Source: Macrostomum hystrix (lineage: Eukaryota > Animalia > Platyhelminthes). Taken from it: a stretch of 64,000 nt of DNA. The stretch lies in NCBI GenBank assembly GCA_950097015.1, contig CATNEN010000024.1:7006001-7070000 (forward strand), given 5' to 3'. The translations under genes and the position numbers were made by a program. This document shows, piece by piece, positions 16,891 to 44,500 of the stretch (the stretch's first letter is position 1; each line of letters opens with the position of its first letter). Under the pieces are notes generated by a model, which was not told the DNA's origin, made no database searches, and saw only the letters and a program-made list of their open reading frames with translations.

Positions 16891-17616
16891 GAAACTTACG
16901 GAAGAATTAAATTAAAATTTGAAGTTTAGGCTACCTATCTGTCTCGAGACGGCCATTAATACAATCTGTATGTTTTTTGTTTAACTTACATTTTTTCTTG
17001 TGAAAATGTACTATAATTCTTACTAGCATATTTCCGCACTGAATACTTCAAATAATTTCTGTTGTTTATTTGTGAGACTATAAACACTACCAATATTTCA
17101 GTTCACTCTGTCAGGTAAATATTGAACAACAAAACATGGAAAACAACATTTTCTAGATGTCTTTGCTTTCTATTTTATTTGATGCGTATAGTACTTTTCT
17201 GATGCATTTACACAATGGACCAAATGCAGTGGAGTTCAACGGGATAAATTCTGTAGCTGTAAGTCTGTACCAAAGCAAGAAATCTTCATGTAACATACTA
17301 CTAGATGAATGGCATTCAAGTAGTACACAAGGCACTCGGCTCAGGCATAAAAATTATCAACACATATATATTGCTTCACCTGGCGTGATATGTGATTTAC
17401 TCAAATATTCTGTTGTTCAGCCTGTTTACTAAGCCCATTAATTTCTTTGACAATAAACTAAGGATAAAAAATAATATCCATGCTCTTTTATGTTTCATCT
17501 GAGCAGCACATTTTTTCTCGTATCTTAGAAAAATCTTGTAGCTAATTTGATAATATTTGTCAATAAGTCTTTTCATTGAAAGAAGGAGAACGTTGAAAAC
17601 TGTTTTAATAGCAATC

Positions 17617-20600
17617 AATCTCAGCCCACAGGTCTCTCAGCCCACAGGTCTCTCAGCCAACAGGTCTCTCAGCCCACAGGTCTCTCAGCCCACAGGTCTC
17701 TCAGCCCACAGGTCTCTCAGCCCACAGGTCTCTCAGCCTACAGATCTCTCAGCCTACAGATCTCTCAGCCCACAGGTCTCTCAGCCCACAGGTCTCTCAG
17801 CCCACAGGTCTCTCAGCCCACAGGTCTCTCAGCCCACAGGTCTCTCAGCCCACAGATCTCTCAGCCCACAGGTCTCTCAGCCCACAGGTCTCTCAGCCCA
17901 CAGGTCTCTCAGCCCACAGGTCTCTCAGCCCACAGGACTCTCAGCCCACAGGTCTCTCAGCCCACAGGACTCTCAGCCCACAGGACTCTTAGCCAACAGA
18001 TCTCTCAGCCCACAGATCTCTCAGCCTACAGATCTCTCAGCCCACAGATCTCTCAGCCCACAGGTCTCTCAGCCCACAGATCTCTCAGCCCACAGATCTC
18101 TCAGCCTACAGATCTCTCAGCCCACAGGTCTCTCAGCCTACAGATCTCTCAGCCCACAGGTCTCTCAGCCCACAGGACTCTCAGCCTACAGATCTCTCAG
18201 CCCACAGGTCTCTCAGCCCACAGGACTCTCAGCCCACAGGTCTCTCAGCCCACAGGACTCTCAGCCTACAGATCTCTCAGCCAACAGATCTCTCAGCCCA
18301 CAGATCTCTCAGCCCACAGGACTCTCAGCCCACAGATCTCTCAGCCTACAGATCTCTCAGCCAACAGATCTCTCAGCCCACAGATCTCTCAGCCTTCAAT
18401 CTCACCCTACAGATCTCTCAGCCCACAGATCTCTCAGCCTTCAATCTCACCCTACAGATCTCTCAGCCTACAGATCTCTCAGCCAACAGATCTCTCAGCC
18501 AACAGATCTCTCAGCCCACAGATCTCTCAGCCTTCAATCTCACCCTACAGATCTCTCAGCCCACAGATCTCTCAGCCTTCAATCTCACCCTACAGATCTC
18601 TCAGCCTACAGGTCTCTCAGCCTTCAGTCTCAGCCCACAGGTCTCTCAGCCCACAGGTCTCTCAGCCCACAGGTCTCTCAGCCCACAGGTCTCTCAGCCC
18701 ACAGGTCTCTCAGCCCACAGATCTCTCAGCCCACAGATCTCTCAGCCCACAGGTCTCTCAGCCCACAGGTCTCTCAGCCCACAGATCTCTCAGCCCACAG
18801 GTCTCTCAGCCCACAGGTCTCTCAGCCAACAGATCTCTCAGCCCACAGGTCTCTCAGCCCACAGGTCTCTCAGCCCACAGATCTCTCAGCCTTCAATCTC
18901 AGCCCACAGATCTCTCAGCCCACAGGTCTCTCAGCCCACAGATCTCTCAGCCTTCAATCTCAGCCCACAGGTCTCTCAGCCCACAGGTCTCTCAGCCCAC
19001 AGGTCTCTCAGCCCACAGGTCTCTCAGCCCACAGGTCTCTCAGCCCACAGGTCTCTCAGCCCACAGGTCTCTCAGCCCACAGGACTCTCAGCCCACAGAT
19101 CTCTCAGCCCACAGATCTCTCAGCCCACAGATCTCTCAGCCTACAGATCTCTCAGCCCACAGGTCTCTCAGCCCACAGGTCTCTTAGCCAACAGATCTCT
19201 CAGCCCACAGATCTCTCAGCCCACAGATCTCTCAGCCCACAGATCTCTCAGCCCACAGATCTCTCAGCCTTCAATCTCAGCCCACAGATCTCTCAGCCCA
19301 CAGGTCTCTCAGCCCACAGATCTCTCAGCCTTCAATCTCAGCCCACAGGTCTCTCAGCCCACAGGTCTCTCAGCCCACAGGTCTCTCAGCCCACAGGTCT
19401 CTCAGCCCACAGGTCTCTCAGCCCACAGGTCTCTCAGCCCACAGGTCTCTCAGCCCACAGGTCTCTCAGCCCACAGGTCTCTCAGCCCACAGGACTCTCA
19501 GCCCACAGATCTCTCAGCCTACAGATCTCTCAGCCCACAGGTCTCTCAGCCAACAGATCTCTCAGCCCACAGATCTCTCAGCCCACAGATCTCTCAGCCC
19601 ACAGATCTCTCAGCCTACAGATCTCTCAGCCCACAGATCTCTCAGCCCACAGATCTCTCAGCCCACAGATCTCTCAGCCAACAGATCTCTCAGCCCACAG
19701 ATCTCTCAGCCCACAGATCTCTCAGCCTTCAATCTCAGCCCACAGGTCTCTCAGCCCACAGATCTCTCAGCCCACAGGTCTCTCAGCCCACAGGACTCTC
19801 AGCCCACAGATCTCTCAGCCAACAGATCTCTCAGCCCACAGATCTCTCAGCCCACAGGACTCTCAGCCCACAGATCTCTCAGCCTTCAATCTCAGCCCAC
19901 AGGTCTCTCAGCCCACAGATCTCTCAGCCCACAGATCTCTCAGCCCACAGGTCTCTCAGCCCACAGATCTCTCAGCCTTCAATCTCAGCCCACAGGTCTC
20001 TCAGCCCACAGATCTCTCAGCCCACAGGTCTCTCAGCCCACAGGACTCTCAGCCCACAGATCTCTCAGCCAACAGATCTCTCAGCCCACAGATCTCTCAG
20101 CCCACAGGACTCTCAGCCCACAGATCTCTCAGCCTACAGATCTCTCAGCCCACAGATCTCTCAGCCCACAGATCTCTCAGCCTTCAATCTCACCCTACAG
20201 ATCTCTCAGCCCACAGATCTCTCAGCCCACAGATCTCTCAGCCCACAGATCTCTCAGCCTTCAATCTCACCCTACAGATCTCTCAGCCCACAGATCTCTC
20301 AGCCCACAGATCTCTCAGCCTTCAATCTCACCCTACAGATCTCTCAGCCCACAGATCTCTCAGCCTTCAATCTCACCCTACAGATCTCTCAGCCTACAGG
20401 TCTCTCAGCCTTCAGTCTCAGCCCACAGGTCTCTCAGCCCACAGGTCTCTCAGCCCACAGGTCTCTCAGCCCACAGGTCTCTCAGCCCACAGGTCTCTCA
20501 GCCCACAGGTCTCTCAGCCCACAGGTCTCTCAGCCCACAGGTCTCTCAGCCCACAGGTCTCTCAGCCCACAGATCTCTCAGCCCACAGATCTCTCAGCCC

Positions 20601-23535
20601 AAAGATCTCTCAGCCCACAGATCTCTCAGCCCACAGGTCTCTCAGCCCACAGGTCTCTCAGCCCACAGGTCTCTCAGCCTTCAATCTCAGCCCACAGGTC
20701 TCTCAGCCCACAGGTCTCTCAGCCCACAGATCTCTCAGCCTTCAATCTCAGCCCACAGGTCTCTCAGCCCACAGGTCTCTCAGCCCACAGGTCTCTCAGC
20801 CCACAGGTCTCTCAGCCCACAGGTCTCTCAGCCCACAGGTCTCTCAGCCCACAGGTCTCTCAGCCCACAGATCTCTCAGCCCACAGGTCTCTCAGCCCAC
20901 AGATCTCTCAGCCCACAGGTCTCTCAGCCCACAGATCTCTCAGCCCACAGGTCTCTCAGCCCACAGGTCTCTCAGCCCACAGATCTCTCAGCCCACAGGT
21001 CTCTCAGCCCACAGATCTCTCAGCCCACAGATCTCTCAGCCCACAGATCTCTCAGCCAACAGATCTCTCAGCCCACAGATCTCTCAGCCTTCAATCTCAC
21101 CCTACAGATCTCTCAGCCCACAGATCTCTCAGCCTTCAATCTCACCCTACAGATCTCTCAGCCTACAGGTCTCTCAGCCTTCAGTCTCAGCCCACAGGTC
21201 TCTCAGCCCACAGGTCTCTCAGCCCACAGGTCTCTCAGCCCACAGGTCTCTCAGCCCACAGGTCTCTCAGCCCACAGGTCTCTCAGCCCACAGATCTCTC
21301 AGCCCACAGATCTCTCAGCCCACAGATCTCTCAGCCCACAGGTCTCTCAGCCCACAGATCTCTCAGCCTTCAGTCTCAGCCCACAGGTCTCTCAGCCCAC
21401 AGGTCTCTCAGCCCACAGATCTCTCAGCCTTCAATCTCAGCCCACAGGTCTCTCAGCCCACAGGTCTCTCAGCCCACAGGTCTCTCAGCCCACAGGTCTC
21501 TCAGCCCACAGGTCTCTCAGCCCACAGATCTCTCAGCCCACAGGTCTCTCAGCCCACAGATCTCTCAGCCCACAGGTCTCTCAGCCCACAGATCTCTCAG
21601 CCCACAGGTCTCTCAGCCCACAGATCTCTCAGCCCACAGATCTCTCAGCCCACAGGTCTCTCAGCCCACAGATCTCTCAGCCCACAGATCTCTCAGCCAA
21701 CAGATCTCTCAGCCCACAGATCTCTCAGCCCACAGGTCTCTCAGCCCACAGATCTCTCACCCTACAGATCTCTCAGCCCACAGATCTCTCAGCCTACAGA
21801 TCTCTCAGCCCACAGGTCTCTCAGCCCACAGATCTCTCAGCCCACAAGTCTCTCAGCCCACAGGTCTCTCAGCCTTCAGTCTCAGCCCACAGGTCTCTCA
21901 GCCCACAGGTCTCTCAGCCCACAGGTCTCTCAGCCCACAGGTCTCTCAGACTACAGGTCTCTCAGCCTTCAATCTCAGCCCACAGATCTCTCAGCCCACA
22001 GATCTCTCAGCCCACAGATCTCTCAGCCCACAGATCTCTCAGCCCACAGATCTCTCAGCCCACAGATCTCTCAGCCCACAGATCTCTCAGCCCACAGATC
22101 TCTCAGCCCACAGATCTCTCAGCCCACAGATCTCTCAGCCCACTGGTCTCTCAGCCCACAGATCTCTCAGCCAACAGATCTCTCAGCCCACAGGACTCTC
22201 AGCCCACAGATCTCTCAGCCCACTGGTCTCTCAGCCCACAGGACTCTCAGCCCACAGATCTCTCAGCCCACTGGTCTCTCAGCCCACAGGTCTCTCAGCC
22301 CACAGATCTCTCAGCCCACAGGACTCTCAGCCCACAGATCTCTCAGCCAACAGATCTCTCAGCCCACAGATCTCTCAGCCTTCAATCTCACCCTACAGAT
22401 CTCTCAGCCCACAGATCTCTCAGCCTTCAATCTCACCCTACAGATCTCTCAGCCCACAGATCTCTCAGCCAACAGATCTCTCAGCCCACAGATCTCTCAG
22501 CCCACAGGACTCTCAGCCCACAGATCTCTCAGCCAACAGATCTCTCAGCCCACAGATCTCTCAGCCTTCAATCTCACCCTACAGATCTCTCAGCCCACAG
22601 ATCTCTCAGCCTTCAATCTCACCCTACAGATCTCTCAGCCCACAGGTCTCTCAGCCCACAGGTCTCTCAGCCCACAGGTCTCTCAGCCCACAGGTCTCTC
22701 AGCCCACAGGTCTCTCAGCCCACAGGTCTCTCAGCCCACAGATCTCTCAGCCCACAGATCTCTCAGCCCACAGATCTCTCAGCCCACAGGTCTCTCAGCC
22801 CACAGATCTCTCAGCCCACAGATCTCTCAGCCCACAGGTCTCTCAGCCCACAGATCTCTCAGCCTTCAATCTCAGCCCACAGGTCTCTCAGCCCACAGGT
22901 CTCTCAGCCCACAGATCTCTCAGCCTTCAATCTCAGCCCACAGGTCTCTCAGCCCACAGGTCTCTCAGCCCACAGGTCTCTCAGCCCACAGGTCTCTCAG
23001 CCCACAGGTCTCTCAGCCCACAGGTCTCTCAGCCCACAGATCTCTCAGCCTTCAATCTCAGCCCACAGGTCTCTCAGCCCACAGGTCTCTCAGCCCACAG
23101 GTCTCTCAGCCCACAGGTCTCTCAGCCCACAGGTCTCTCAGCCCACAGATCTCTCAGCCCACAGGTCTCTCAGCCCACAGGTCTCTTAGCCAACAGATCT
23201 CTCAGCCAACAGATCTCTCAGCCCACAGATCTCTCAGCCCACAGATCTCTCAGCCCACAGATCTCTCAGCCCACAGATCTCTCAGCCCACAGATCTCTCA
23301 GCCCACAGATCTCTCAGCCCACAGATCTCTCAGCCCACAGGTCTCTCAGCCCACAGATCTCTCAGCCCACAGATCTCTCAGCCCACAGATCTCTCAGCCC
23401 ACAGATCTCTCAGCCCACAGATCTCTCAGCCTACAGATCTCTCAGCCCACAGATCTCTCAGCCTACAGATCTCTCAGCCCACAGATCTCTCAGCCTACAG
23501 ATCTCTCAGCCCACAGATCTCTCAGCCTACAGATC
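17617..23535. repeat. 5.9-kb 16-bp minisatellite (cccacag[a/g]tctctcag) with 13-bp variant units
   Basis: About 370 units. The unit length is not a multiple of 3, and the 2003-aa ORF is a 16-aa periodic by-product. Confidence 0.97.
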
Positions 23536-23794
23536 TGTGTTGAAGAACTGAAGTGTGGCATTGAGTAAGTCCCCCAAAAAAGTCAGCGAGTCTGAGATCA
23601 AAGTTCGACTGACTCAAAGAAATGCTTATCTCGCCTGGTACGCCTTCGTGGGCTTAGCACTGGTACGGGAAGCGCAAAAGTGTGACGAAAAAGTTTAAGA
23701 TTTCTGATTAGAAAACTGTCAGAAATCAGCATTTTAATGACAACTCAAGGTCGCCAAAAAGCAATTAGCCCCATGTAGAAGAGGATTAATCAAC

Positions 23795-25090: not shown

Positions 25091-26050
25091 TCATTCTCTC
25101 TTCTTGTCCTTGTCCGGCACCAGCTCGCCGTTCTCAGTGCCGCCCATCAGCTCCGTGGCGTGCTTGTTGATCCTCTGGCCGCGGCGCCTCTCCTCCCAGG
25201 CCAGCAGCCGCTTGCCCTTGACACCGCCGCCGGAGATGCCCGGACAGTCCCAGCCAAATAGGCGGTCCCAGGTGGAGAAGAAGGGCTGGTAGTTTGTCAG
25301 CGGCTTCATGTGGTGCATGTCGTGCTTTGGCCCGCCGCCGTAGATTGGCAGCCATTTGTGCGGGAAGATCGGCAGATCGTAGCCAGAGTGCGCCTCAACC
25401 GACATGCCAACGTTGAGAAGCATGAAGCACCAGTACGTCATCGGGTGGCACTCGAAGAACCAGCCGTCGATTGTAGTGAAGAAGCCCACCGTCACGAGCT
25501 CCCACGGGTGCAGGTACTGAGTTGTCCAGCCAAACGTGGCGTGGTACTGGTGGTGAATGGCGTGGAAGTTCTTGTACAGCCAGCGGTTGCGGTGATGGAC
25601 CATGTGCCAGAACCAGTACTGAAAGTCAAAGATCATCATCATGGCCACGCTCTGATAGGCGAAGTCGTAGAATTTCGGCGCAAGCTTCGGGAAAGGCGTC
25701 GGTGGCACCCAGATCCACTGAGCGATGATGGTTGGCAGGATGTACACAAAGTTATTGTAGAGCGTCTTCAAGATCGCTTTGCGCATCATTGGCCAGGTGA
25801 CCCTCTTGTCAGGTTGGATTTTGAAGCGCTTGACAATGCTCAGATCTTGGAAGTACAGATCCACGATGGTATAGGGAATATTGCACAGAAAGTAGAACCC
25901 GATGGAGAGGAAGACAGGAAACAATGGCGAAGTCATCCAGTCCTCGAAGCCTAGCCGGAGGTCCCAGATTGGCTGCAGCACGCGTTGCTCCGTGACATTC
26001 TCCTCATGGAGGGTAAAGTTGCGATCTTTTTTGAAGAACTTCAAGTCCAT
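25091..26050 (-). CDS. CH25H: Cholesterol 25-hydroxylase-like protein (fatty acid hydroxylase/sterol desaturase family), intronless, 319 aa
   Basis: Single ORF from ATG 26050 (the track's 26086 start is TTG). Di-iron His boxes WHMVHH, FHAIHH and KHDMHH, plus EAHSGY, QYLHPWE and NYQPFFSTWDRLFG, parallel recalled CH25H motifs. Hydrophobic segments are present. Exact activity is not established. Confidence 0.75.
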   Translation of the reverse strand: MDLKFFKKDRNFTLHEENVTEQRVLQPIWDLRLGFEDWMTSPLFPVFLSIGFYFLCNIPYTIVDLYFQDLSIVKRFKIQPDKRVTWPMMRKAILKTLYNNFVYILPTIIAQWIWVPPTPFPKLAPKFYDFAYQSVAMMMIFDFQYWFWHMVHHRNRWLYKNFHAIHHQYHATFGWTTQYLHPWELVTVGFFTTIDGWFFECHPMTYWCFMLLNVGMSVEAHSGYDLPIFPHKWLPIYGGGPKHDMHHMKPLTNYQPFFSTWDRLFGWDCPGISGGGVKGKRLLAWEERRRGQRINKHATELMGGTENGELVPDKDKKRE

Positions 26051-26953: not shown

Positions 26954-28183
26954 CAGTGTTGGTCGCGTTACCAAAAAGTAACGGCGATGGTGGTAAAAAT
27001 AGTAATAATTGCAGGAGGCTGCGAGCAGTGGCACAGTATTGGTGACACTAGGCCCGCAGCCAGCGAGGAGGCAATTCTGCCCTTTCCGCTGACTCCTGAG
27101 CACACACGCACAGAGATACTGTACGCAGGCACACGCTCACACAGGTGTGTACATCTGCCCTGACTTTCTCATCGTCAGGCAGTGTACACTTCACTGTGCC
27201 TTGTAGGTTGGCCCTCAAGGGCATAAATTGCACGACAAGCCTCCAAGCCTTCTCTCCGCGGCTGCGCCCCAAATAAATGTGGCCTCGCCGTGGAATCGAA
27301 CTTAGGGACCTTGGTGCGAGAGGCAAGCGCGTTAACCGCTCTGCCACCGACCCCCTTGGCGATGGCGGTAACGATCGTTACTGACCATTTGGTAACGTAA
27401 AAATTAGGTAACGAAAAAACACAAAATATTAACTGTCGTTACTTTTAATCGTTACTTTCAGTTTTTTTCGGTTAATTCCGAAGTTACTGAAAAAATACCA
27501 TAAATATGCTACTTTTTACGCCAGCATGTTATGAATATACGTGCTGATTTGTTTATCTGCCAGAACTCATATCATAATGTTGTAATTTCCAACATCGTCC
27601 CTTTTTAGACTCCGTTATCATATCACTCTGACAGATCTTGACCATTTCGGGCTTGGGTTTAGCAGCCATGAGATCACGTGAAGATTTTAGATTAGATTGA
27701 TAATGTTGATGATTGATAATGATCTCATAATTGACGTCAAAGTAAAGTAACAGACTACAGTCAGTCTATGGATTGACCAATAAATATTTAGCAAAGCCGC
27801 AGTTAGCAACAAAAACAAAGAAACTCAAATCCAAATAAATGCAAAATGTTATTAATATAAAGCAATAGAAATGGGAAGATGAACTTGCCAATTATATAAA
27901 TTTGACTATCTTTTTACTTGTAAGTAGAAAAGTCAAACAATTTAAAACGTTTCTTTTACACAGCAAAAGAAATAATTTACAGTGCTGCTAGTGTCCTACT
28001 AATTTTTTCGGAAACTGCTAACGAAAACAGGTACCGGGAAATGCACACGTACTGTTGGTAACGACTCGTTACCATCATTTTCGTTACCAGCCCGTGGTTA
28101 CGGAAAAAAAGTAACGTTGCGAAAAAGTAACGATCGTTACCAAATTGGTAACTAGTAACGAGTAACGCGCCCAAAACATCCTG
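26954..28183. mobile_element. Degenerate non-autonomous DNA transposon (MITE/hAT-like) interrupted by SINE copy 3
   Basis: Imperfect terminal inverted repeats (CAGTGTTGGTCGCGTTAC versus CAGGATGTTTTGGGCGCGTTAC on the reverse strand) and dense GTAAC/GTTAC subterminal motifs at both ends. No TSD found. Confidence 0.35.
27001..27355 (-). mobile_element. tRNA-derived SINE, copy 3 (full length, with target-site duplication)
   Basis: A box TGGCAGAGCGG, B box AAGTTCGATTCC, tRNA-like end CGAGGCCA and an ATT tail. Flanked by GGCGATGGTGGTAA (26983-26996) and GGCGATGGCGGTAA (27358-27371). Confidence 0.85.
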
Positions 28184-28576
28184 AATCTGTGAACCTCGTC
28201 TTCTAGAGCCCAATCCAATGTTGAGGACTTTCGGCGAGTTCAATTGAGTCAGTCGTGTCAGTCTCTTAGCATTAAAAAGGTAAGAGCTAGCTGTGTAGCT
28301 ACCTGAAGCAGTTTCTTTCTAAAGGTAAGTTAAGAAAAGAAACGACATAGCAGATTATGCGTTAAGTTGTTAGAAAACAAAGCTCTGCATTAAAACATCA
28401 TTGTTAACGCGTCTTAATTTGTATTTCTGTAGAACTGTTCAGTTTTCGATCGCACTTTATCACAAATTTGTTATATCAGGCTTTCAAATTTCAGATTGGA
28501 AATTCGAAACGATTGCTGGAATCCAAGATCTACCTGACGGTCACTGCTTATTCTTTCTAGGCTAAAAAGCAGTATT

Positions 28577-28582
28577 TTTATT
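28577..28582 (-). terminator. Polyadenylation signal AATAAA of the neuropeptide gene
   Basis: Located about 85 nt downstream of the stop codon on the coding strand. Confidence 0.5.
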
Positions 28583-28665
28583 CCAAACAGGATTCAGACA
28601 CTAAAGAGACAAGAGTCTAAACCAGTTGCATTGCATGAACGTTGGCGCGCTTTGTTTTGCTTTCT

Positions 28666-28968
28666 CTACCAGGTGCAGAACTTCAGCAGGCATGGCGTCA
28701 CACCGTAGGATCTGCGACGCACCACTGGACCCGAGGGCGTTGGCGCCGGCGGCTGCTGCGCCCTCTCGCGCTGCTCCTGGCGCTGCTGCTGCCAGTCCAG
28801 CATCATTTGGCGCAGCAGAAGCCGGCGAAGCATCGACTCGGAGCGCAGATCGGTGTCGTACCTCGGGTCGGTAGCAACTTCATCGTCTTCGGCGACTGTC
28901 ATGCAATGGACTCCATGCAGGACGGCCAGGCAGAGAAGAAGGGCGGTTGCAATGCTGATTGGGGCCAT
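28666..28968 (-). CDS. Secreted neuropeptide precursor; predicted mature peptide SYGVTPCLLKFCTW (urotensin II/somatostatin-related-peptide-like)
   Basis: Signal peptide MAPISIATALLLCLAVLHGVHC, then an acidic/Gln-rich pro-region, an RRR cleavage site (28711-28719) and a C-terminal 14-mer (28669-28710) with a Cys-X4-Cys ring. GC-rich coding-like codons. A non-coding first exon is joined by a 97-nt GT-AG intron (29079-28983). Confidence 0.75.
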   Translation of the reverse strand: MAPISIATALLLCLAVLHGVHCMTVAEDDEVATDPRYDTDLRSESMLRRLLLRQMMLDWQQQRQEQRERAQQPPAPTPSGPVVRRRSYGVTPCLLKFCTW

Positions 28969-29139
28969 ACCTTTTAGTTGCTCTGTAGGACTTTACAGAA
29001 AGAAAATAAGGAAAATTTAATTTTGCATCTCAAACGAAAAACTAGGCGTAGAGCAGCTTAAAAGACATGAATAGCTTACCAGTGTGACAAATTCTCTGTT
29101 GAAGCGGACTACAATAGACGCGATGCTCTTTGCTGGGTT

Positions 29140-29200
29140 CGGTGAATTTGACGGAAGCTGCAGTGGAGCCGGACTTATAGACGATTCCAACCAACCAATC
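29140..29200 (-). promoter_or_regulatory. Core promoter of the neuropeptide gene (TATA, inverted CCAAT, Inr-like)
   Basis: TATAAG at 29179-29174, CCAAT at 29195-29199 (+ strand) and a TCAAAT Inr-like motif ~30 nt downstream of the TATA, followed by an exon ending in CTG|GTAAGC at 29080. Confidence 0.5.
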
Positions 29201-30289
29201 AAATCTTCGGATGGGGTAGAGGGCGATGGGCCCACCGTTCGCGCCGCTCAACAGCCAGACTGGCATCGGAAGAGTGGTGAGAAAAGGCGGGGGCGTTCTT
29301 CATATTCTGAGGCTTTCCAATCAGAAATCAACCCCAGACCCTCAGTTACGATGCCTCCCACCGCTGCCACCTGCACCACTTGAGAACCTGTCGGGAGTGA
29401 GTGAATTGTATTTTGCACCCTTTTTCCATTCGCTTGATTCGTTCTGTAGATGCGCCCACAATAGGCAGCGTGCTCAGCAGACAATCTGATTATGCGAGCT
29501 ATTTCAATACATTTTTCCTGGGTGTGCAGGTAAAACAACACTGCTTTTAAATTTCAAAATCTGAATGATTCCCTCCCGAGGGTGGCCGTACGGCGGCTGG
29601 TCCAGGAGGTTTGAGAGTCCCCAGCAGTCTCGTGGGACTAAAGAACCAAAAGCAGCTGGGCAAAAAAGGTGGATTCCGCCCACCAAATTTAAATCTGGAG
29701 CTCTAGAGCGACTTCTAGGAAAACTAGATAGGATGGCTTTGTGGACATCTGTTTGATGTGCTCGCTTGTGTTGCAGAAAGCTAAATTAGAAGAGATGCGG
29801 AGGAGCAGCAGATGCTGCGGGCTTATCAGACGGACTGGGGGCCTGGGATCTATGGAAAATTGCTTCCACGACAGGCAACAACAGGCAGCTTGAAATGCAG
29901 GTAATTCAAGCACATATCGGAATGTCCTATCTCTAAACTGGAGCTTTAAATGCCTGCCTTCGCTATTCTAGCATACACAAGCATATTATGACGCAGTCTT
30001 TCTATTCGACATTTTAAGCAATGCTCAATATACACATGCCTTGAACTGAATTTAATAAGGAGCGCTTCAAGCTCTCTCGCTAACAATAATTACAGTCTGT
30101 CTGGCAATACCACTTAGGGCCCACTTGACACCAAACACGAGTCTCTTCTGACAGATTGTTTTAAGAATCGCTTTGGAATTGTCTGGATGGCGGCTTCTGA
30201 GCTTGGCTTCCTACTTCCCAAAGCTAGCCCCTAGCAGAGATAAGAAATATCCAGATATGCAGTAACTTCCTTATTGGCAATATGCCTAT

Positions 30290-32505
30290 GTGTTTCAGCC
30301 GGCATAGTGACCTGTGCTTGTGTCACAGCCGACATAGTGACCTGTGCTTGTGTCACAGCCTTCATAGTGACCTGTGCTTGTGTCACAGCCTTCATAGTGA
30401 CCTGTGCTTGTGTCACAGCCTTCATAGTGACCTGTGCTTGTGTCACAGCCTTCATAGTGACCTGTGCTTGTGTCACAGCCGGCATAGTGACCTGTGCTTG
30501 TGTCACAGCCGGCATAGTGAACTGTGCTTGTGTCACAGCCTTCATAGTGACCTGTGCTTGTGTCACAGCCAGCATTGTGACCTGTGCTTGTGTCACAGCC
30601 TTCATAGTGAACTGTGCTTGTGTCACAGCCTTCATAGTGACCTGTGCTTGTGTCACAGCCGGCATAGTGACCTGTGCTTGTGTCACAGCCGGCATAGTGA
30701 ACTGTGCTTGTGTCACAGCCTTCATAGTGACCTGTGCTTGTGTCACAGCCAGCATTGTGACCTGTGCTTGTGTCACAGCCTTCATAGTGAACTGTGCTTG
30801 TGTCACAGCCTTCATAGTGACCTGTGCTTGTGTCACAGCCGGCATAGTGACCTGTGCTTGTGTCACAGCCGGCATAGTGAACTGTGCTTGTGTCACAGCC
30901 TTCATAGTGACCTGTGCTTGTGTCACAGCCAGCATTGTGACCTGTGCTTGTGTCACAGCCTTCATAGTGAACTGTGCTTGTGTCACAGCCTTCATAGTGA
31001 CCTGTGCTTGTGTCACAGCCGGCATAGTGACGTGTGCTTGTGTCACAGCCGGCATAGTGACCTGTGCTTGTGTCACAGCCGGCATAGTGACCTGTGCTTG
31101 TGTCACAGCCGGCATTGTGACCTGTGCTTGTGTCACAGCCGGCATAGTGACCTGTGCTTGTGTCACAGCCGGCATAGTGAACTGTGCTTGTGTCACAGCC
31201 TTCATAGTGACCTGTGCTTGTGTCACAGCCAGCATTGTGACCTGTGCTTGTGTCACAGCCTTCATAGTGAACTGTGCTTGTGTCACAGCCTTCATAGTGA
31301 CCTGTGCTTGTGTCACAGCCGGCATATGACCTGTGCTTGTGTCACAGCCGGCATATGACCTGTGCTTGTGTCACAGCCTTCATAGTGACCTGTGCTTGTG
31401 TCACAGCCTTCATAGTGACCTGTGCTTGTGTCACAGCCGGCATAGTGACCTGTGCTTGTGTCACAGCCGGCATAGTGAACTGTGCTTGTGTCACAGCCTT
31501 CATAGTGACCTGTGCTTGTGTCACAGCCAGCATTGTGACCTGTGCTTGTGTCACAGCCTTCATAGTGAACTGTGCTTGTGTCACATCCTTCATAGTGACC
31601 TGTGCTTGTGTCACAGCCGGCATAGTGACCTGTGCTTGTGTCACAGCCGGCATAGTGAACTGTGCTTGTGTCACAGCCTTCATAGTGACCTGTGCTTGTG
31701 TCACAGCCAGCATTGTGACCTGTGCTTGTGTCACAGCCTTCATAGTGAACTGTGCTTGTGTCACAGCCTTCATAGTGACCTGTGCTTGTGTCACAGCCGG
31801 CATAGTGACGTGTGCTTGTGTCACAGCCGGCATAGTGACCTGTGCTTGTGTCACAGCCGGCATAGTGACCTGTGCTTGTGTCACAGCCGGCATTGTGACC
31901 TGTGCTTGTGTCACAGCCGGCATAGTGACCTGTGCTTGTGTCACAGCCGGCATAGTGAACTGTGCTTGTGTCACAGCCTTCATAGTGACCTCTGCTTGTG
32001 TCACAGCCAGCATTGTGACCTGTGCTTGTGTCACAGCCTTCATAGTGAACTGTGCTTGTGTCACAGCCTTCATAGTGACCTGTGCTTGTGTCACAGCCGG
32101 CATATGACCTGTGCTTGTGTCACAGCCGGCATATGACCTGTGCTTGTGTCACAGCCGGCATAGTGAACTGTGCTTGTGTCACAGCCGGCATAGTGACGTG
32201 TGCTTGTGTCACAGCCGGCATATGACCTGTGCTTGTGTCACAGCCTTCATAGTGACCTGTGCTTGTGTCACAGCCGGCATATGACCTGTGCTTGTGTCAC
32301 AGCCGGCATATGACCTGTGCTTGTGTCACAGCCGGCATATGACCTGTGCTTGTGTCACAGCCGGCATATGACCTGTGCTTGTGTCACAGCCGGCATATGA
32401 CCTGTGCTTGTGTCACAGCCGGCATAGTGACGTGTGCTTGTGTCACAGCCGGCATATGACCTGTGCTTGTGTCACAGCTGGCATAGTGACGTGTGCTTGT
32501 GTCTG
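30290..32505. repeat. 30-bp minisatellite (gtgacctgtgcttgtgtcacagcc[tt/gg/ag]cat[a/t]) with a 180-bp higher-order repeat
   Basis: The six-unit variant cycle repeats at 30481, 30661 and 30841. A 29-bp variant appears distally. Confidence 0.97.
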
Positions 32506-39070: not shown

Positions 39071-41142
39071 ATGGGCAACTCGCACACTTCGATAGAGCCA
39101 AATCTGCGGCACGCCCAAGCTACTGGCGTGCTGCAACTGGTTGGAAAAAAACTGGAGGAATGGCCAGCAGCGGTGCACAAGCTAAATAGCAGTCTGCGAA
39201 CACTGGATTTGTCTAACAACCGCATAGCTTCTGTGCCACCCAGCATTGAGGCAATGACGCAACTCAAGCAGCTCACACTCGCTTCCAACCGACTGACGGG
39301 TGAGTAATACTGATACCAGAATCTCACTAATCTCACCCACTGATACCAGAATCTCACTAATCTCACCCACTGATACCAGAATCTCACTAATCTCACCCAC
39401 TGATACCAGAATCTCACTAATCTCACCCACTGATACCAGAATCTCACTAATCGCACCCACTGATACCAGAATCTCACTAATCTCACCCACTGATACCAGA
39501 ATCTCATTAATCTCACCCACTGATACCAGAATCTCACTAATCTCACCCACTGATACCAGAATCTCACTAATCGCACCCACTGATACCAGAATCTCACTAA
39601 TCTCACCCACTGATACCAGAATCTCATTAATCTCACCCACTGATACCAGAATCTCATTAATCTCACCCACTGATACCAGAATCTCATTAATCTCACCCAC
39701 TGATACCAGAATCTCATTAATCTCACCCACTGATACCAGAATCTCATTAATCTCACCCACTGATACCAGAATCTCACTAATCTCACCCACTGATACCAGA
39801 ATCTCACTAATCTCACCCACTGATACCAGAATCTCACTAATCTCACACACTGATACCAGAATCTCACTAATCTCACCCACTGATATCAGAATCTCACTAA
39901 TCGCACACACTGATACCAGAATCTCACTAATCTCACCCACTGATACCAGAATCTCACTAATCTCACCCACTGATACCAGAATCTCACTAATCTCACCCAC
40001 CGATACCAGAATTTCACTAATCTCACCCACTGATACCAGAATCTCACTAATCTCACCCACTGATACCAGAATCTCACTAATCTCACCCACTGATATCAGA
40101 ATCTCACTAATCTCACCCACTGATATCAGAATCTCACTAATCTCACCCACTGATACCAGAATCTCACTAATCTCACCCACTGATATCAGAATCTCACTAA
40201 TCGCACACACTGATACCAGAATCTCACTAATCTCACCCACTGATACCAGAATCTCACTAATCTCACCCACTGATATCAGAATCTTACTAATCTCACACAC
40301 TGATACCAGAATCTCACTAATCTCACCCACTGATACCAGAATCTCACTAATCGCACCCACTGATACCAGAATCTCACTAATCTCACCCACTGATACCAGA
40401 ATCTCACTAATCTCACCCACTGATACCAGAATCTCATTAATCTCACCCACTGATACCAGAATCTCATTAATCTCACCCACTGATACCAGAATCTCACTAA
40501 TCTCATCCACTGATACCAGAATCTCACTAATCTCACCCACTGATACCAGAATCTCACTAATCTCACCCACTGATACCAGAATCTCACTAATCTCACCCAC
40601 TGATACCAGAATCTCACTAATCTCACACACTCGTTGGCTCGGCAGGCCTACCTGACCAGCTGAGCAGTCTGAGCAGGCTAACCGTCCTGTCGCTCGAGCA
40701 GAACTTTCTGCAGTCATTGCCATCCGGCCTTGGCCAGTTGAAATCATTGAAGACCCTGCAGCTGGCTCACAACAGATTCAAAGAATTCCCTAGGCCAGCA
40801 CTGGAGCTGCCAGCTCTTGAACTGCTGGACCTGTCTGCCAACAGCATCACCCACCTACCTCCTGACATGTCCGTCCTGAAGGCTGTTGAACTCAATCTCA
40901 ACCAGAACCAATTGAAACAGCTCACAGACAGTTTGGCTGACTGTCCCAGGCTGAAGATTCTTCGGCTGCAGGAGAACTGCCTGCCGTTGGACCAGTTCAC
41001 GCCGGCATTATTGCGCAACTCGCAGCTCACCCTGCTAGCCGTTGAAGGCAATCTGTTCCTCATGAAACAGTTCGACCAGCTGGATGGCAGCGATGCCTAT
41101 CAGGAGCGCGTGACAGCCGTGCGTAGGAAGGCCGAACATTAG
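39071..41142 (+). CDS. LRRC57: Leucine-rich repeat-containing protein 57, 2 exons
   Basis: Exons 39071-39299 and 40646-41142 (phase 1). MGNS N-terminus, HAQATGVLQL, LRTLDLSNNRI, LKAVELNLNQNQ, CPRLKILRLQENCL and LAVEGNLF...YQERVTA closely follow the recalled human LRRC57 sequence. Confidence 0.9.
39310..40630. repeat. 30-bp minisatellite (tgataccagaatctcactaatctcacccac) filling the single LRRC57 intron
   Basis: About 44 copies. It starts ~10 nt after the GT donor and ends ~15 nt before the AG acceptor. Confidence 0.97.
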
Positions 41143-41209: not shown

Positions 41210-41599
41210 AACTGTTTAATTGGACATTTGGTTCCGAAGACCATCACGATTGGCAAATTGGTTTCAATTATTTTATCAGTCTGTCTGTACAGCAAGTATT
41301 ACATTTTTGTATTGCTCGTGTTTGTTTTTTATTCCGAAAGTAAGACAACTCCTAGACTACTAGAAGTAGTTGAACAAAACTGTGTGTGTACTTACCTCTG
41401 CTAATTTTTATGCATATGTCAATAAGGCTATTAATAATTATTTATTGGGTAAATAACTACAAAAACTTAACCCCTTAAGTTCAAAGAACTACAAAATCTC
41501 ACATTAAGTAGTTTAGAATAATTCAAAATCTCACCCTGAAAAGTTGAACCCACAACAAAATCTCAGAAGGTTAAAACAAAGTTTAAAAGTTTATCCCTC

Positions 41600-44500
41600 T
41601 GAAGGTTAAAACACCACAAAATCTCACCACTGAAGGTTAAAACACCACAAAATCTCACCCTCTGAAGGTTCAAACTACAAAAAAATCTCACCCTCTGAAG
41701 GTTCAAACTACAACAAAATCTCACCCTCTGAAGAATCAAACTACAACAAAATCTCACCCTCTGAAGATTCAAACTACAGCAAAATCTCACCCTCTGAAGA
41801 TTCAAACTACAACAAAATCTCACCCTCTGAAGATTCAAACTACAACAAAATCTCACCCTCTGAAGATTCAAACTACAACAAAATCTCACCCTCTGAAGGT
41901 TCAAACTACAACAAAATCTCACCCTCTGAAGATTCAAACTACAACAAAATCTCACCCTCTGAAGATTCAAACTACAACAAAATCTCACCCTCTGAAGGTT
42001 CAAACTACAACAAAATCTCACTCTCTGAAGATTCAAACTACAACAAAATCTCACTCTCTGAAGATTCAAACTACAACAAAATCTCACCCTCTGAAGATTC
42101 AAACTACAACAAAATCTCACCCTCTGAAGGTTCAAACTACAACAAAATCTCACCCTCTGAAGGTTCAAACTACAACAAAATCTCACCCTCTGAAGGTTCA
42201 AACTACAACAAAATCTCACCCTCTGAAGGTTCAAACTACAAAAAGTCTCACCCTCTGAAGATTCAAACTACAGCAAAATCTCACCCTCTGAAGATTCAAA
42301 CTACAACAAAATCTCACTCTCTGAAGATTCAAACTACAACAAAATCTCACTCTCTGAAGATTCAAACTACAACAAAATCTCACTCTCTGAAGATTCAAAC
42401 TACAACAAAATCTCACTCTCTGAAGGTTCAAACTACAACAAAATCTCACCCTCTGAAGGTTCAAACTACAGCAAAATCTCACCCTCTGAAGATTCAAACT
42501 ACAACAAAATCTCACTCTCTGAAGATTCAAACTACAACAAAATCTCACTCTCTGAAGATTCAAACTACAACAAAATCTCACCCTCTGAAGGTTCAAACTA
42601 CAACAAAATCTCACTCTCTGAAGATTCAAACTACAACAAAATCTCACCCTCTGAAGGTTCAAACTACAACAAAATCTCACCCTCTGAAGGTTCAAACTAC
42701 AACAAAATCTCACCCTCTGAAGGTTCAAACTACAACAAAATCTCATCCTCTGAAGGTTCAAACTACAACAAAATCTCACCCTCTGAAGGTTCAAACTACA
42801 ACAAAATCTCACCCTCTGAAGGTTCAAACTACAAAAAGTCTCACCCTCTGAAGATTCAAACTACAGCAAAATCTCACCCTCTGAAGATTCAAACTACAAC
42901 AAAATCTCACTCTCTGAAGATTCAAACTACAACAAAATCTCACTCTCTGAAGATTCAAACTACAACAAAATCTCACTCTCTGAAGATTCAAACTACAACA
43001 AAATCTCACTCTCTGAAGGTTCAAACTACAACAAAATCTCACCCTCTGAAGGTTCAAACTACAGCAAAATCTCACCCTCTGAAGATTCAAACTACAACAA
43101 AATCTCACTCTCTGAAGATTCAAACTACAACAAAATCTCACTCTCTGAAGATTCAAACTACAACAAAATCTCACCCTCTGAAGGTTCAAACTACAACAAA
43201 ATCTCACTCTCTGAAGATTCAAACTACAACAAAATCTCACCCTCTGAAGGTTCAAACTACAACAAAATCTCACCCTCTGAAGGTTCAAACTACAACAAAA
43301 TCTCACCCTCTGAAGGTTCAAACTACAACAAAATCTCACCCTCTGAAGGTTCAAACTACAAAAAATCTCACCCTCTGAAGGTTCAAACTACAACAAAATC
43401 TCACCCTCTGAAGATTCAAACTACAACAAAATCTCACCCTCTGAAGGTTCAAACTACAACAAAATCTCACTCTCTGAAGATTCAAACTACAACAAAATCT
43501 CACCCTCTGAAGGTTCAAACTACAACAAAATCTCACCCTCTGAAGGTTCAAACTACAACAAAATCTCACCCTCTGAAGGTTCAAACTACAACAAAATCTC
43601 ACCCTCTGAAGGTTCAAACTACAACAAAATCTCACTCTCTGAAGATTCAAACTACAACAAAATCTCACCCTCTGAAGGTTCAAACTACAACAAAATCTCA
43701 CTCTCTGAAGATTCAAACTACAACAAAATCTCACCCTCTGAAGGTTCAAACTACAACAAAATCTCACTCTCTGAAGATTCAAACTACAACAAAATCTCAC
43801 CCTCTGAAGATTCAAACTACAACAAAATCTCACCCTCTGAAGATTCAAACTACAACAAAATCTCACTCTCTGAAGATTCAAACTACAACAAAATCTCACC
43901 CTCTGAAGGTTCAAACTACAACAAAATCTCACTCTCTGAAGATTCAAACTACAACAAAATCTCACCCTCTGAAGGTTCAAACTACAACAAAATCTCACCC
44001 TCTGAAGATTCAAACTACAACAAAATCTCACCCTCTGAAGATTCAAACTACAACAAAATCTCACCCTCTGAAGATTCAAACTACAACAAAATCTCACCCT
44101 CTGAAGATTCAAACTACAACAAAATCTCACCCTCTGAAGACTCAAACTACAACAAAATCTCACCCTCTGAAGATTCAAACTACAACAAAATCTCACTCTC
44201 TGAAGATTCAAACTACAACAAAAGCTCACCCTCTGAAGACTCAAACTACAACAAAATCTCACCCTCTGAAGATTCAAACTACAACAAAATCTCACTCTCT
44301 GAAGATTCAAACTACAACAAAAGCTCACCCTCTGAAGACTCAAACTACAACAAAATCTCACCCTCTGAAGATTCAAACTACAACAAAATCTCACTCTCTG
44401 AAGATTCAAACTACAACAAAAGCTCACCCTCTGAAGACTCAAACTACAACAAAATCTCACCCTCTGAAGATTCAAACTACAACAAAATCTCACTCTCTGA

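What the first reader, a model, noticed from the sequence alone, without database searches (positions are those of the whole stretch)
28666..28968. Candidate flatworm urotensin-II/somatostatin-related neuropeptide with an altered pharmacophore (CLLKFC)
Seen: signal peptide, pro-region, RRR site and a terminal 14-mer SYGVTPCLLKFCTW with a 6-residue disulfide ring. The gene also has its own TATA/CCAAT, a 5'UTR intron and a poly(A) signal. Known: vertebrate urotensin II has the ring CFWKYC, and (from recall) spiralian UII/SST-related peptides have C-x-W-K-x-C rings at the precursor C-terminus. Inference: this is a family member in which the conserved Trp is replaced by Leu (CTG, two changes from TGG, so unlikely to be a single-base error). 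That may mean a new receptor specificity or a lineage-specific peptide family. Small ORFs like this are often missed by annotation.
Basis: partly seen in the sequence, partly recalled or inferred. Interest (0 to 1): 0.8.

Follow-up and report, generated by a model that had tools for sequence, protein, structure and literature searches.

The report
Flatworm urotensin-like cyclic peptide gene
A small, spliced and expressed Macrostomum flatworm gene encodes a secreted precursor whose only strictly conserved part is a C-terminal disulphide-ringed peptide (ring CLLKFC), built like urotensin II/somatostatin-related hormones but without their hallmark tryptophan. It is either the first flatworm member of that hormone family or a convergent look-alike.

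Summary
Window 28666-28968 (-) is a 100-aa ORF with a signal peptide, a pro-region, RRR and a terminal 14-mer, SYGVTPCLLKFCTW.

- **Real gene.** Two runs carry a spliced contig that removes an 89-nt GT..AG intron from the 5'UTR, and a TATA box lies about 30 nt upstream of the contig's 5' end.
- **Conserved.** M. lignano has a syntenic ortholog. Its precursor is 60% identical overall, but the 14-mer is 14/14 identical. A paralog on contig C38 shares only the tail, ...GPVVRRRSNVTPCLLKFCTW.
- **No wider homologs.** Pfam and two very large protein searches found none outside Macrostomum.
- **Family resemblance.** A protein-language-model search places both paralogs nearest to urotensin II/URP precursors. 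The peptide matches the published protostome somatostatin-related (SSRP-like) pattern in ring size, aliphatic first residue, Lys and free C-terminal Trp.
- **Family mismatches.** It lacks the defining Trp, and the coding sequence has no intron where that family has a phase-0 intron.
- **Receptors.** The genome holds at least seven somatostatin-receptor-like GPCR loci. Pairing with the peptide is untested.

Verdict: a genuine peptide-hormone precursor (about 0.85). SSRP/UII family membership is plausible but unproven (about 0.45). I found no published description.

The parts
29195..29199 (-). CCAAT box (reads ATTGG on the gene strand)
   Evidence: Read directly from the sequence. The same ATTGG-then-TATA layout occurs in the M. 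lignano ortholog and in the C38 paralog.
29174..29179 (-). TATA box (TATAAG)
   Evidence: It lies 25-30 nt upstream of the 5' end (29149) of the spliced RNA contig. The ortholog has TATAAA and the paralog TATATAAAA at the same relative place.
29080..29149 (-). Exon 1, non-coding 5'UTR (at least 70 nt)
   Evidence: Covered by X4 contig record 7, with 0 differences.
28991..29079 (-). 89-nt intron in the 5'UTR (GT..AG)
   Evidence: A joint from 28990 to 29080 is seen in X4 and X5 contigs, with ends CT..AC on the + strand. A 5'UTR intron just before the ATG is also implied by the M. lignano gene model and is predicted in the paralog.
28369..28990 (-). Exon 2: 22 nt of 5'UTR, the whole CDS and the 3'UTR
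   Evidence: The X4 contig covers 28369-28990 and the X5 contig 28384-28990, both with 0 differences.
28666..28968 (-). Intronless CDS, 100 aa plus stop
   Evidence: Found by the ORF listing. It is 60% identical to M. lignano BOX15_Mlig030219g1.
28903..28968 (-). Predicted signal peptide (aa 1-22, cleavage after VHC)
   Evidence: Hydrophobic core with V at -3 and C at -1. Cys at -1 is conserved in the ortholog and the paralog. This is a heuristic; no SignalP was run.
28720..28902 (-). Pro-region (aa 23-83), fast-evolving, with an internal RR at aa 48-49
   Evidence: 36/69 aligned positions are identical to M. lignano, against 14/14 in the mature peptide.
28711..28719 (-). RRR prohormone-convertase site (aa 84-86)
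   Evidence: RRR in the window gene and the paralog, HRR in M. lignano. The genome has several loci with a proprotein-convertase P domain.
28669..28710 (-). Predicted mature 14-mer SYGVTPCLLKFCTW. Ring Cys93 (28690-28692) to Cys98 (28675-28677). Free C-terminal Trp.
   Evidence: 14/14 identical in M. lignano and 12 of 13 residues shared with the paralog, with synonymous codon differences. Contigs from two further coded organisms (X1, X2) show no change in this stretch.
28577..28582 (-). AATAAA hexamer, 84 nt after the stop
   Evidence: Present in the sequence, but the RNA contigs extend about 200 nt beyond it. Its use is unproven.

Best explanation
This is a genuine two-exon gene of a Macrostomum flatworm. 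It encodes a small prohormone.

Inferred mechanism:
1. The signal peptide directs the precursor into the secretory pathway.
2. The two remaining cysteines form one disulphide.
3. A proprotein convertase cuts after RRR.
4. This releases a non-amidated cyclic 14-mer, SYGVTPC[LLKF]CTW, which runs to the translation stop.
5. The peptide is secreted as a neuropeptide or hormone and acts on a G-protein-coupled receptor.

In build it is a urotensin-II / protostome somatostatin-related (SSRP-like) peptide. The aromatic Trp of the W-K pharmacophore is replaced by Leu, while the hydrophobic-hydrophobic-Lys-aromatic pattern of the ring is kept.

Shown: gene, splicing, transcription, and conservation focused on the peptide.
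Inferred: processing, disulphide, secretion, signalling role and family descent.

My odds: real gene 0.97; processed secreted bioactive peptide 0.85; true evolutionary member of the SSRP/UII family about 0.45. The confidence given for this entry (0.6) is for the statement as a whole.
For: - **Transcript.** Spliced, minus-strand RNA contigs occur in two runs.
- **Ortholog.** M. lignano has an ortholog with conserved neighbourhood: FA_hydroxylase lies just downstream in both species.
- **Conservation profile.** Signal peptide 13/22, pro-region 36/69, and 16/17 over the three-residue basic site plus the 14-mer, with the mature 14-mer itself 14/14. Synonymous changes occur inside the peptide codons.
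- **Paralog.** The C38 paralog shares only ...GPVVRRRS-NVTPCLLKFCTW, together with the same ATTGG/TATA promoter and 5'UTR-intron layout.
- **Cysteines.** Only two Cys lie beyond the signal peptide.
- **Processing enzymes.** Convertase P-domain loci are present. A PC2 homolog is known to be expressed in the M. lignano nervous system (PMC4490696).
- **Language-model search.** The ESM-Atlas feature search puts the window protein nearest to urotensin-2 (0.92, 191/256 features). It puts the paralog nearest to URP1, urotensin-2 and UTS2B (0.93-0.94).
- **Published family pattern.** Protostome SSRP-like peptides have a four-residue loop, I/V/L before W-K, Pro residues, a single Trp near the C-terminus and Gly/Ser at the N-terminus. 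Capitella Ct-SSRPL1 is pQASSGAQICIWKVCPPTPW-OH (PMC9048919).
- **Candidate receptors.** At least seven somatostatin-receptor-like GPCR loci exist in this genome; the three I tested had SSTR1 or SSTR3 as their best solved-structure match.
Against: - The Trp of the defining W-K motif is absent.
- The CDS is intronless, whereas every SSRP, SSRP-like and AstC gene examined by Koch et al. has a phase-0 intron in the pro-region.
- No Pfam hit, including Urotensin_II.
- No homolog outside Macrostomum among 5.8 billion and 1.84 billion proteins.
- The Atlas 'recognition' values (2144 and 2129) are below the tool's reliability mark.
- Koch et al. judged the nematode NLP-56, with an F-K ring, not to be a secure family member.
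- The SSTR-like receptors here carry His, Tyr or Asn where SSTR1/2 have the TM3 Asp. From my own knowledge, that Asp is the anchor for the ligand's Lys.
- Gamma-rhodopsin receptors were reported absent from Schistosoma and Schmidtea (PMC3261222).
- Tissue of expression is unknown.
Confidence: 0.6

Rival explanations
1. It is a lineage-specific (macrostomid) neuropeptide family that reached a C-x4-C C-terminal ring by convergence and does not descend from the SSRP/UII gene.
For: No detectable sequence homolog outside Macrostomum. The Trp is missing. There is no pro-region intron. Resemblance over six to eight residues cannot be tested statistically. Koch et al. treated the F-K nematode peptide as uncertain.
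Against: Several independent features co-occur with the published protostome pattern: position at the precursor end, ring size, aliphatic residue at ring position 1, Lys at position 3, terminal Trp and no amidation. Both paralogs hit UII/URP clusters first among 7.7 million Atlas clusters. Somatostatin-receptor-like receptors exist in the genome.
Confidence: 0.35
2. It is a secreted peptide with a non-signalling role, for example an antimicrobial, adhesive-gland or seminal-fluid peptide, rather than a neuropeptide.
For: The tissue of expression was not determined. The precursor is small, secreted and fast-evolving outside the tail. Ring-closed cationic C-termini occur in some amphibian antimicrobial peptides (my own knowledge).
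Against: The released peptide is invariant between species while the rest diverges. This is typical of receptor ligands and the opposite of reproductive or immune effectors. It carries only one basic residue and has no amphipathic helix. The tribasic convertase site is conserved.
Confidence: 0.1
3. It is an allatostatin-C-type peptide.
For: An allatostatin C cluster was the second Atlas hit for the window protein (0.91). The candidate receptors resemble somatostatin/AstC-type receptors.
Against: Protostome AstC loops always have six residues between the cysteines, usually with Asn and often F-x-P (PMC9048919). Here the loop has four residues and none of those features. For the paralog, the hits listed at 0.9 or above were all urotensin-type.
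Confidence: 0.04

Closest known systems
Protostome somatostatin-related (SSRP-like) peptides, e.g. Capitella Ct-SSRPL1 and Aplysia apUII (Koch et al. 2022, PMC9048919; Romanova et al. 2012, PMC3493602)
   Same: - Small secreted precursor with the peptide at the C-terminal end, after a basic site.
- One disulphide with four residues between the cysteines.
- Aliphatic residue at ring position 1 and Lys at ring position 3.
- Non-amidated, with Trp at the C-terminus.
- Gly/Ser-rich N-terminal part and a Pro next to the ring.
   Different: - Ring position 2 is Leu instead of the invariant Trp.
- The C-terminal tail is two residues (TW) rather than a Pro-rich tail.
- The CDS has no intron, whereas the family has a phase-0 pro-region intron, usually with a phase-1 intron as well.
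- No sequence-level link between the precursors.
- The family has not been reported from flatworms in the papers I could search.
Vertebrate urotensin II / URP (ring CFWKYC; Pfam PF02083)
   Same: Six-residue ring at the extreme C-terminus of a precursor of about 100-130 aa. The pattern is hydrophobic, hydrophobic, Lys, aromatic. It is the nearest set of clusters in the language-model feature search for both paralogs.
   Different: F-W is replaced by L-L and Y by F. The PF02083 model gives no hit. UII genes have several introns. The UT-type Asp anchor is not seen in the candidate receptors.
Nematode NLP-56 (F-K ring)
   Same: A protostome cyclic peptide that resembles SSRPs but lacks the Trp.
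   Different: F-K rather than L-K. It formed a solitary cluster in Koch et al.'s analysis, and no relation to the Macrostomum genes has been tested.
Allatostatin C
   Same: C-terminal disulphide-looped, non-amidated peptide. Its receptors belong to the somatostatin-like GPCR group.
   Different: The loop has six residues, not four, and the motif differs (Asn, F-x-P).

Membership tests
SSRP-like / urotensin II family | Secreted precursor with the bioactive peptide at the C-terminal end, behind a basic cleavage site | tested here: met
   Signal-peptide-like N-terminus, RRR (HRR in M. lignano), and the peptide runs to the stop codon.
SSRP-like / urotensin II family | Disulphide loop with four residues between the two Cys (UII, URP, protostome SSRP-like) | tested here: met
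   C-LLKF-C, invariant in three genes. These are the only two Cys beyond the signal peptide. Bond formation itself is not testable here.
SSRP-like / urotensin II family | Trp-Lys (W-K) motif inside the loop | tested here: not met
   Leu-Lys, with codon CTG in all three genes. Koch et al. used C.WK.C as the family criterion.
SSRP-like / urotensin II family | Aliphatic (protostome) or aromatic (chordate) residue before W-K | tested here: met
   Leu at ring position 1; the published set is I/V/L.
SSRP-like / urotensin II family | Phase-0 intron in the pro-region | tested here: not met
   The CDS is one uninterrupted exon in the window gene (spliced contig), in M. lignano and in the paralog. The only intron lies in the 5'UTR. 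Intron loss is possible: two Dimorphilus genes lack the other (second) family intron.
SSRP-like / urotensin II family | Detectable sequence or cluster link of the precursor to known members | tested here: inconclusive
   HMMER and word searches found nothing outside Macrostomum. Pfam PF02083 gave no hit. The language-model feature search ranks UII/URP clusters first for both paralogs, but below the tool's reliability mark.
SSRP-like / urotensin II family | Cognate receptor of the somatostatin/UT/MCH/opioid GPCR group | tested here: inconclusive
   At least seven SSTR-like receptor loci are present. Their TM3 Asp is replaced. Pairing is untested, and the co-fold job gave no verdict.
Allatostatin C | Six residues between the Cys in protostomes | tested here: not met
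   Four residues here; the rule comes from PMC9048919.
Vasopressin/oxytocin | C-x4-C ring directly after the signal peptide, an amidated nonapeptide, and a neurophysin domain | tested here: not met
   The ring lies at the extreme C-terminus. There is no Gly amidation signal and no Cys-rich domain.

The most novel reading that the evidence does not exclude
These genes are the flatworm representatives of the bilaterian somatostatin/urotensin-related peptide system, which has not been reported from Platyhelminthes in the papers I could search. In them the supposedly indispensable Trp of the W-K pharmacophore has been replaced by Leu. They signal through an expanded, Macrostomum-retained family of somatostatin-receptor-like GPCRs that has itself lost the classical TM3 Asp. 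Ligand and receptor would then have been remodelled together.
Probability: 0.35. Interest if true: 0.7.

Novelty: new variant of a known kind. Interest (0 to 1): 0.55.

Why it matters
Somatostatin-related peptides were only recently traced into protostomes: molluscs, annelids, brachiopods and rotifers. Flatworms are a gap in that picture, and a 2022 review table lists somatostatin in helminths as 'unknown'.

A conserved Trp-less ring would show that the W-K core, used both to define the family and to search for it, can be lost. Motif-based surveys would then miss members.

This genome also holds at least seven somatostatin-receptor-like GPCR loci, a class reported absent from Schistosoma and Schmidtea. 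Together with the peptide, they give a directly testable ligand-receptor question in a transgenic, RNAi-amenable flatworm genus.

The gene is unannotated here. In M. lignano it is labelled only 'hypothetical protein, partial', with 5'UTR wrongly translated.

Tried and rejected
- **Pfam scan** of the precursor at E up to 10: nothing.
- **Word-index search**, with the single protein and with a three-sequence profile: only the M. lignano ortholog.
- **Exhaustive HMMER search** of 1.84 billion representatives: the ortholog plus one spurious 951-aa repeat protein, which matches 'PTPAGGVIV'.
- **Exact-protein look-up** of the window product: not on record.
- **PF02083 on the whole genome**: best 15.7 bits, below the cut-off, inside a 223-aa frame.
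- **Pattern C-x-W-K-x-C**: 751 hits against 201 in the control, too many to screen and not screened.
- **Pattern C-[aliphatic]-W-K-x-C-P**: one hit (C11:1080138). It lies antisense to a coding exon, with no signal peptide and not at a C-terminus, so I rejected it.
- **Pattern C-xxKx-C-x-W-stop**: 24 hits against 7 in the control. Apart from the three known loci, I read none as a credible precursor: nearly all lie in short open frames without a start codon or basic site, and the few longer frames (L065, L067, L077) have a Met but no signal-peptide-like N-terminus or basic site before the ring.
- **Capitella Ct-SSRPL1 19-mer against the genome**: no match, which is uninformative.
- **Co-fold** of one SSTR-like receptor with the last 30 residues of the precursor: no verdict (score 0.02). 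This is neither support nor evidence against binding.
- **Literature searches** for the ring sequence, and for flatworm/Macrostomum with urotensin, somatostatin or SSRP-like: no description found. McVeigh 2009 and Koziol 2016 are not held, so prior description there cannot be excluded.
- **Supplements of Koch et al.** are not held. A precursor-level alignment or cluster analysis with known SSRP-like sequences was therefore not possible.
- **Families considered and rejected** on loop size or position: AstC, vasopressin, CCAP, calcitonin, MCH, CCHamide.

Full report
**What is there**

Window 28666-28968 on the minus strand is an ATG-to-stop ORF of 100 codons. Its features are:
- A hydrophobic N-terminus (core TALLLCLAVL) ending in VHC, which fits a signal-peptidase site.
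- An acidic, Gln-rich pro-region with an internal RR.
- RRR at residues 84-86.
- A 14-residue tail, SYGVTPCLLKFCTW, followed directly by TAG.
- Only two cysteines beyond the signal peptide, four residues apart.

**It is a real, spliced, transcribed gene**

Four small runs of one 2020 study hold 63-70% of the sampled words of this stretch. I laid two of them, X4 and X5, on the window. Each carries one contig (692 and 659 nt) with no differences from the window. The contig covers 29149-29080, skips 89 nt (28991-29079) and continues from 28990 to 28369 or 28384.

The skipped piece begins GT and ends AG on the minus strand. The transcript is therefore minus-strand and spliced. No contig lies on the intron or on the flanks beyond 29207. 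These runs behave as RNA, although their record does not say so.

A TATAAG box (29179-29174) sits 25-30 nt upstream of the contig's first base, and a CCAAT box (29195-29199) lies just beyond it. The 3' end is open.

**Conservation picks out the tail peptide**

The only database relative is the Macrostomum lignano 'hypothetical protein BOX15_Mlig030219g1, partial'. Its first 40 residues are translated 5'UTR. From its Met onward it aligns end to end with the window protein.

The two M. lignano loci carry a FA_hydroxylase gene 1.7 kb downstream on the same strand. The window has the same gene at 26050-25091, with 93% amino-acid identity. The genes are therefore orthologs by synteny.

Identity between the two precursors is uneven:

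| Region | Identical positions |
|---|---|
| Signal peptide | 13/22 |
| Pro-region | 36/69 |
| Mature peptide | 14/14 |

The basic site reads RRR here and HRR in M. lignano. Codons for Ser, Gly, Val and Thr inside the peptide differ synonymously, which shows selection on the amino-acid sequence.

Contigs from two differently labelled organisms (X1, X2) cover the peptide-coding stretch without change.

Within this genome there are two further loci:
- A copy on contig C6 that is 99.5% identical over 3.3 kb. It is probably the other haplotype or a very recent duplicate.
- A true paralog on C38, a 132-aa ORF. It shares nothing recognisable with the window protein except ...TPAGPVVRRRS-NVTPCLLKFCTW.

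The paralog has the same ATTGG/TATA promoter. It also has a predicted intron of about 87 nt ending 16 nt before its ATG. The M. lignano gene likewise has an intron of about 93 nt, ending 9 nt before its ATG. A genome-wide pattern search for C-xxKx-C-x-W-stop found no further credible members.

**How it most likely works**

The anatomy is that of a prohormone: ER entry, one disulphide, and cleavage after RRR by a furin/PC2-type convertase. The genome has several loci with convertase P domains. A PC2 homolog is expressed in the M. lignano nervous system and is essential there (PMC4490696).

Cleavage directly yields the cyclic peptide. It has a free N-terminal Ser and the natural, non-amidated C-terminal Trp. 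No carboxypeptidase or amidation step is needed. Predicted masses are 1614.757 Da for the 14-mer and 1508.716 Da for the paralog's 13-mer.

A fast-evolving spacer with an invariant released peptide is what receptor ligands show. Processing, the disulphide, secretion and the signalling role are inferred; none was observed.

**Comparison with the urotensin II / somatostatin-related family**

Koch et al. 2022 (PMC9048919) define protostome SSRP-like peptides by a C.WK.C loop of four residues. Ile, Val or Leu precedes W-K. The peptides also have Pro residues, a single Trp towards the C-terminus, and Gly/Ser towards the N-terminus. The deorphanised Capitella peptide is pQASSGAQICIWKVCPPTPW-OH.

The Macrostomum peptide matches in these respects:
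- position in the precursor
- loop size
- aliphatic first ring residue
- the Lys
- the aromatic fourth ring residue (Phe here; Tyr in UII)
- the free terminal Trp
- the Ser/Gly start

It fails on the Trp of W-K, which is Leu with codon CTG in all three genes.

It also fails on gene structure. All SSRP, SSRP-like and AstC genes examined by Koch et al. share a phase-0 intron in the pro-region, while this CDS is intronless. That is a weaker failure, because two Dimorphilus SSRP-like genes have lost the other (second) family intron. An earlier, unchecked note of this scan also describes an intronless prohormone gene in this genome.

No sequence method links the precursor to known members.

A protein-language-model feature search does point that way. 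For the window protein the top cluster is 'putative urotensin-2' (0.92, 191 of 256 features), followed by allatostatin C. For the paralog the top clusters are URP1, urotensin-2 and UTS2B (0.93-0.94). The two queries share only about 25 residues, so this is a partial replicate. However, the tool's 'recognition' value is below its reliability mark for both.

Koch et al. treated the nematode F-K peptide NLP-56 as an uncertain member. That is the fair precedent for this case.

Allatostatin C is excluded by its invariant six-residue loop.

**Receptors**

Zamanian et al. 2011 found no gamma-rhodopsin (somatostatin/opioid/galanin, MCH) receptors in Schistosoma mansoni or Schmidtea mediterranea (PMC3261222). 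This genome is different.

A motif search followed by protein searches found a family of at least seven intronless or two-exon GPCR loci. They lie at C29:5.08 Mb, C14:2.32 Mb, C32:0.38 Mb, C39:6.08 Mb, C39:18.74 Mb, C7:4.67 Mb and C1:0.80 Mb. For the three I tested, the best solved-structure matches are somatostatin receptors 1 or 3, at E = 1e-28 to 7e-38, followed by opioid receptors. A separate receptor at C25 is galanin/allatostatin-A-like.

Candidate receptors of the right class therefore exist.

In the alignments, the TM3 Asp of SSTR1/2 is His, Tyr or Asn in all six receptors aligned. From my own knowledge, that Asp is the anchor for the ligand's Lys. The classical Lys-Asp contact is thus not conserved.

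Three unchecked first-stage notes report AstC/somatostatin-like peptide genes elsewhere in this genome. Those peptides could be the ligands of these receptors instead. One co-fold job, receptor C29 with the last 30 residues of the precursor, gave no verdict.

**Novelty and verdict**

I found no paper that holds the ring sequence, and none that links flatworms or Macrostomum to urotensin or SSRP-like peptides. A 2022 review lists somatostatin in helminths as unknown. Two key flatworm neuropeptide surveys are not in the library, so prior listing under an 'npp' number cannot be excluded.

- A genuine, conserved peptide-hormone precursor: about 0.85.
- Urotensin/SSRP-like in construction: shown.
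- Family descent: about 0.45.
- Convergent, lineage-specific family: about 0.35.

It is a new variant of a known kind and of moderate interest. Its value lies in a concrete, testable ligand-receptor question.

Noticed in passing
G000 C29:5080512-5081699(+) (L047:616-1803), C14:2315188-2316198(-), C32:376843-377895(+), C39:6080901-6081854(-), C39:18736242-18737276(-), C7:4673264-4674367(+), C1:799668-801505(+): A family of at least seven somatostatin-receptor-like GPCR loci. For the three tested, the best solved-structure matches are SSTR1 or SSTR3. This receptor class was reported absent from Schistosoma and Schmidtea. All six receptors aligned have His, Tyr or Asn in place of the TM3 Asp of SSTR1/2.
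   Followed up: partly
G000 C25:433921-434862(-) (L045:1092-2423:-): An intronless GPCR whose best solved-structure matches are galanin receptors 1 and 2 (E about 1e-44). It is probably an allatostatin-A/buccalin-type receptor.
   Followed up: partly
G000 C6:107474-110773 (L001) versus window 27169-30468 (L002): A second copy of the whole locus, 99.5% identical over 3.3 kb, near the start of contig C6. It is a haplotig or a very recent duplication. The SSTR-like receptor on C29 also has a near-identical copy at C29:12-13 kb, whose frame is split into two ORFs.
   Followed up: partly
window 25091-26050 (-): An intronless fatty-acid hydroxylase (PF04116) gene, 93% identical in protein to its M. 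lignano ortholog. It is the conserved downstream neighbour of the peptide gene.
   Followed up: partly
window 28003-28174: A short element rich in GTAACG/CGTTAC inverted words. It appears in RNA-run contigs with other flanks and with internal rearrangements ('goes back 57'), so it is a dispersed, transcribed repeat, possibly MITE-like.
   Followed up: no
window 17619-23536, 30289-32503, 39309-40631, 41595-46081, 50458-52569 and about 20 further arrays: A large share of the window is made up of minisatellite arrays with periods of 16-58 bp. The 2003-aa 'ORF' at 17557-23568 lies almost exactly over the 16-bp array (about 376 copies) and is probably just that array read through.
   Followed up: no
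M. lignano loci L012 and L013, 6001-6540: The public M. lignano gene model starts at the TATA box and translates 40 codons of 5'UTR in frame across the 5'UTR intron. The deposited 'partial' protein is therefore mis-started; the true product begins at its Met41.
   Followed up: yes
G000 C37:2791761-2791787 (L072): A short tandem repeat that reads SWKEC-SWKEC-SWKEC-SW-stop. It mimics a C-x-W-K-x-C ring but has no start codon or signal peptide, so it is not a gene.
   Followed up: yes
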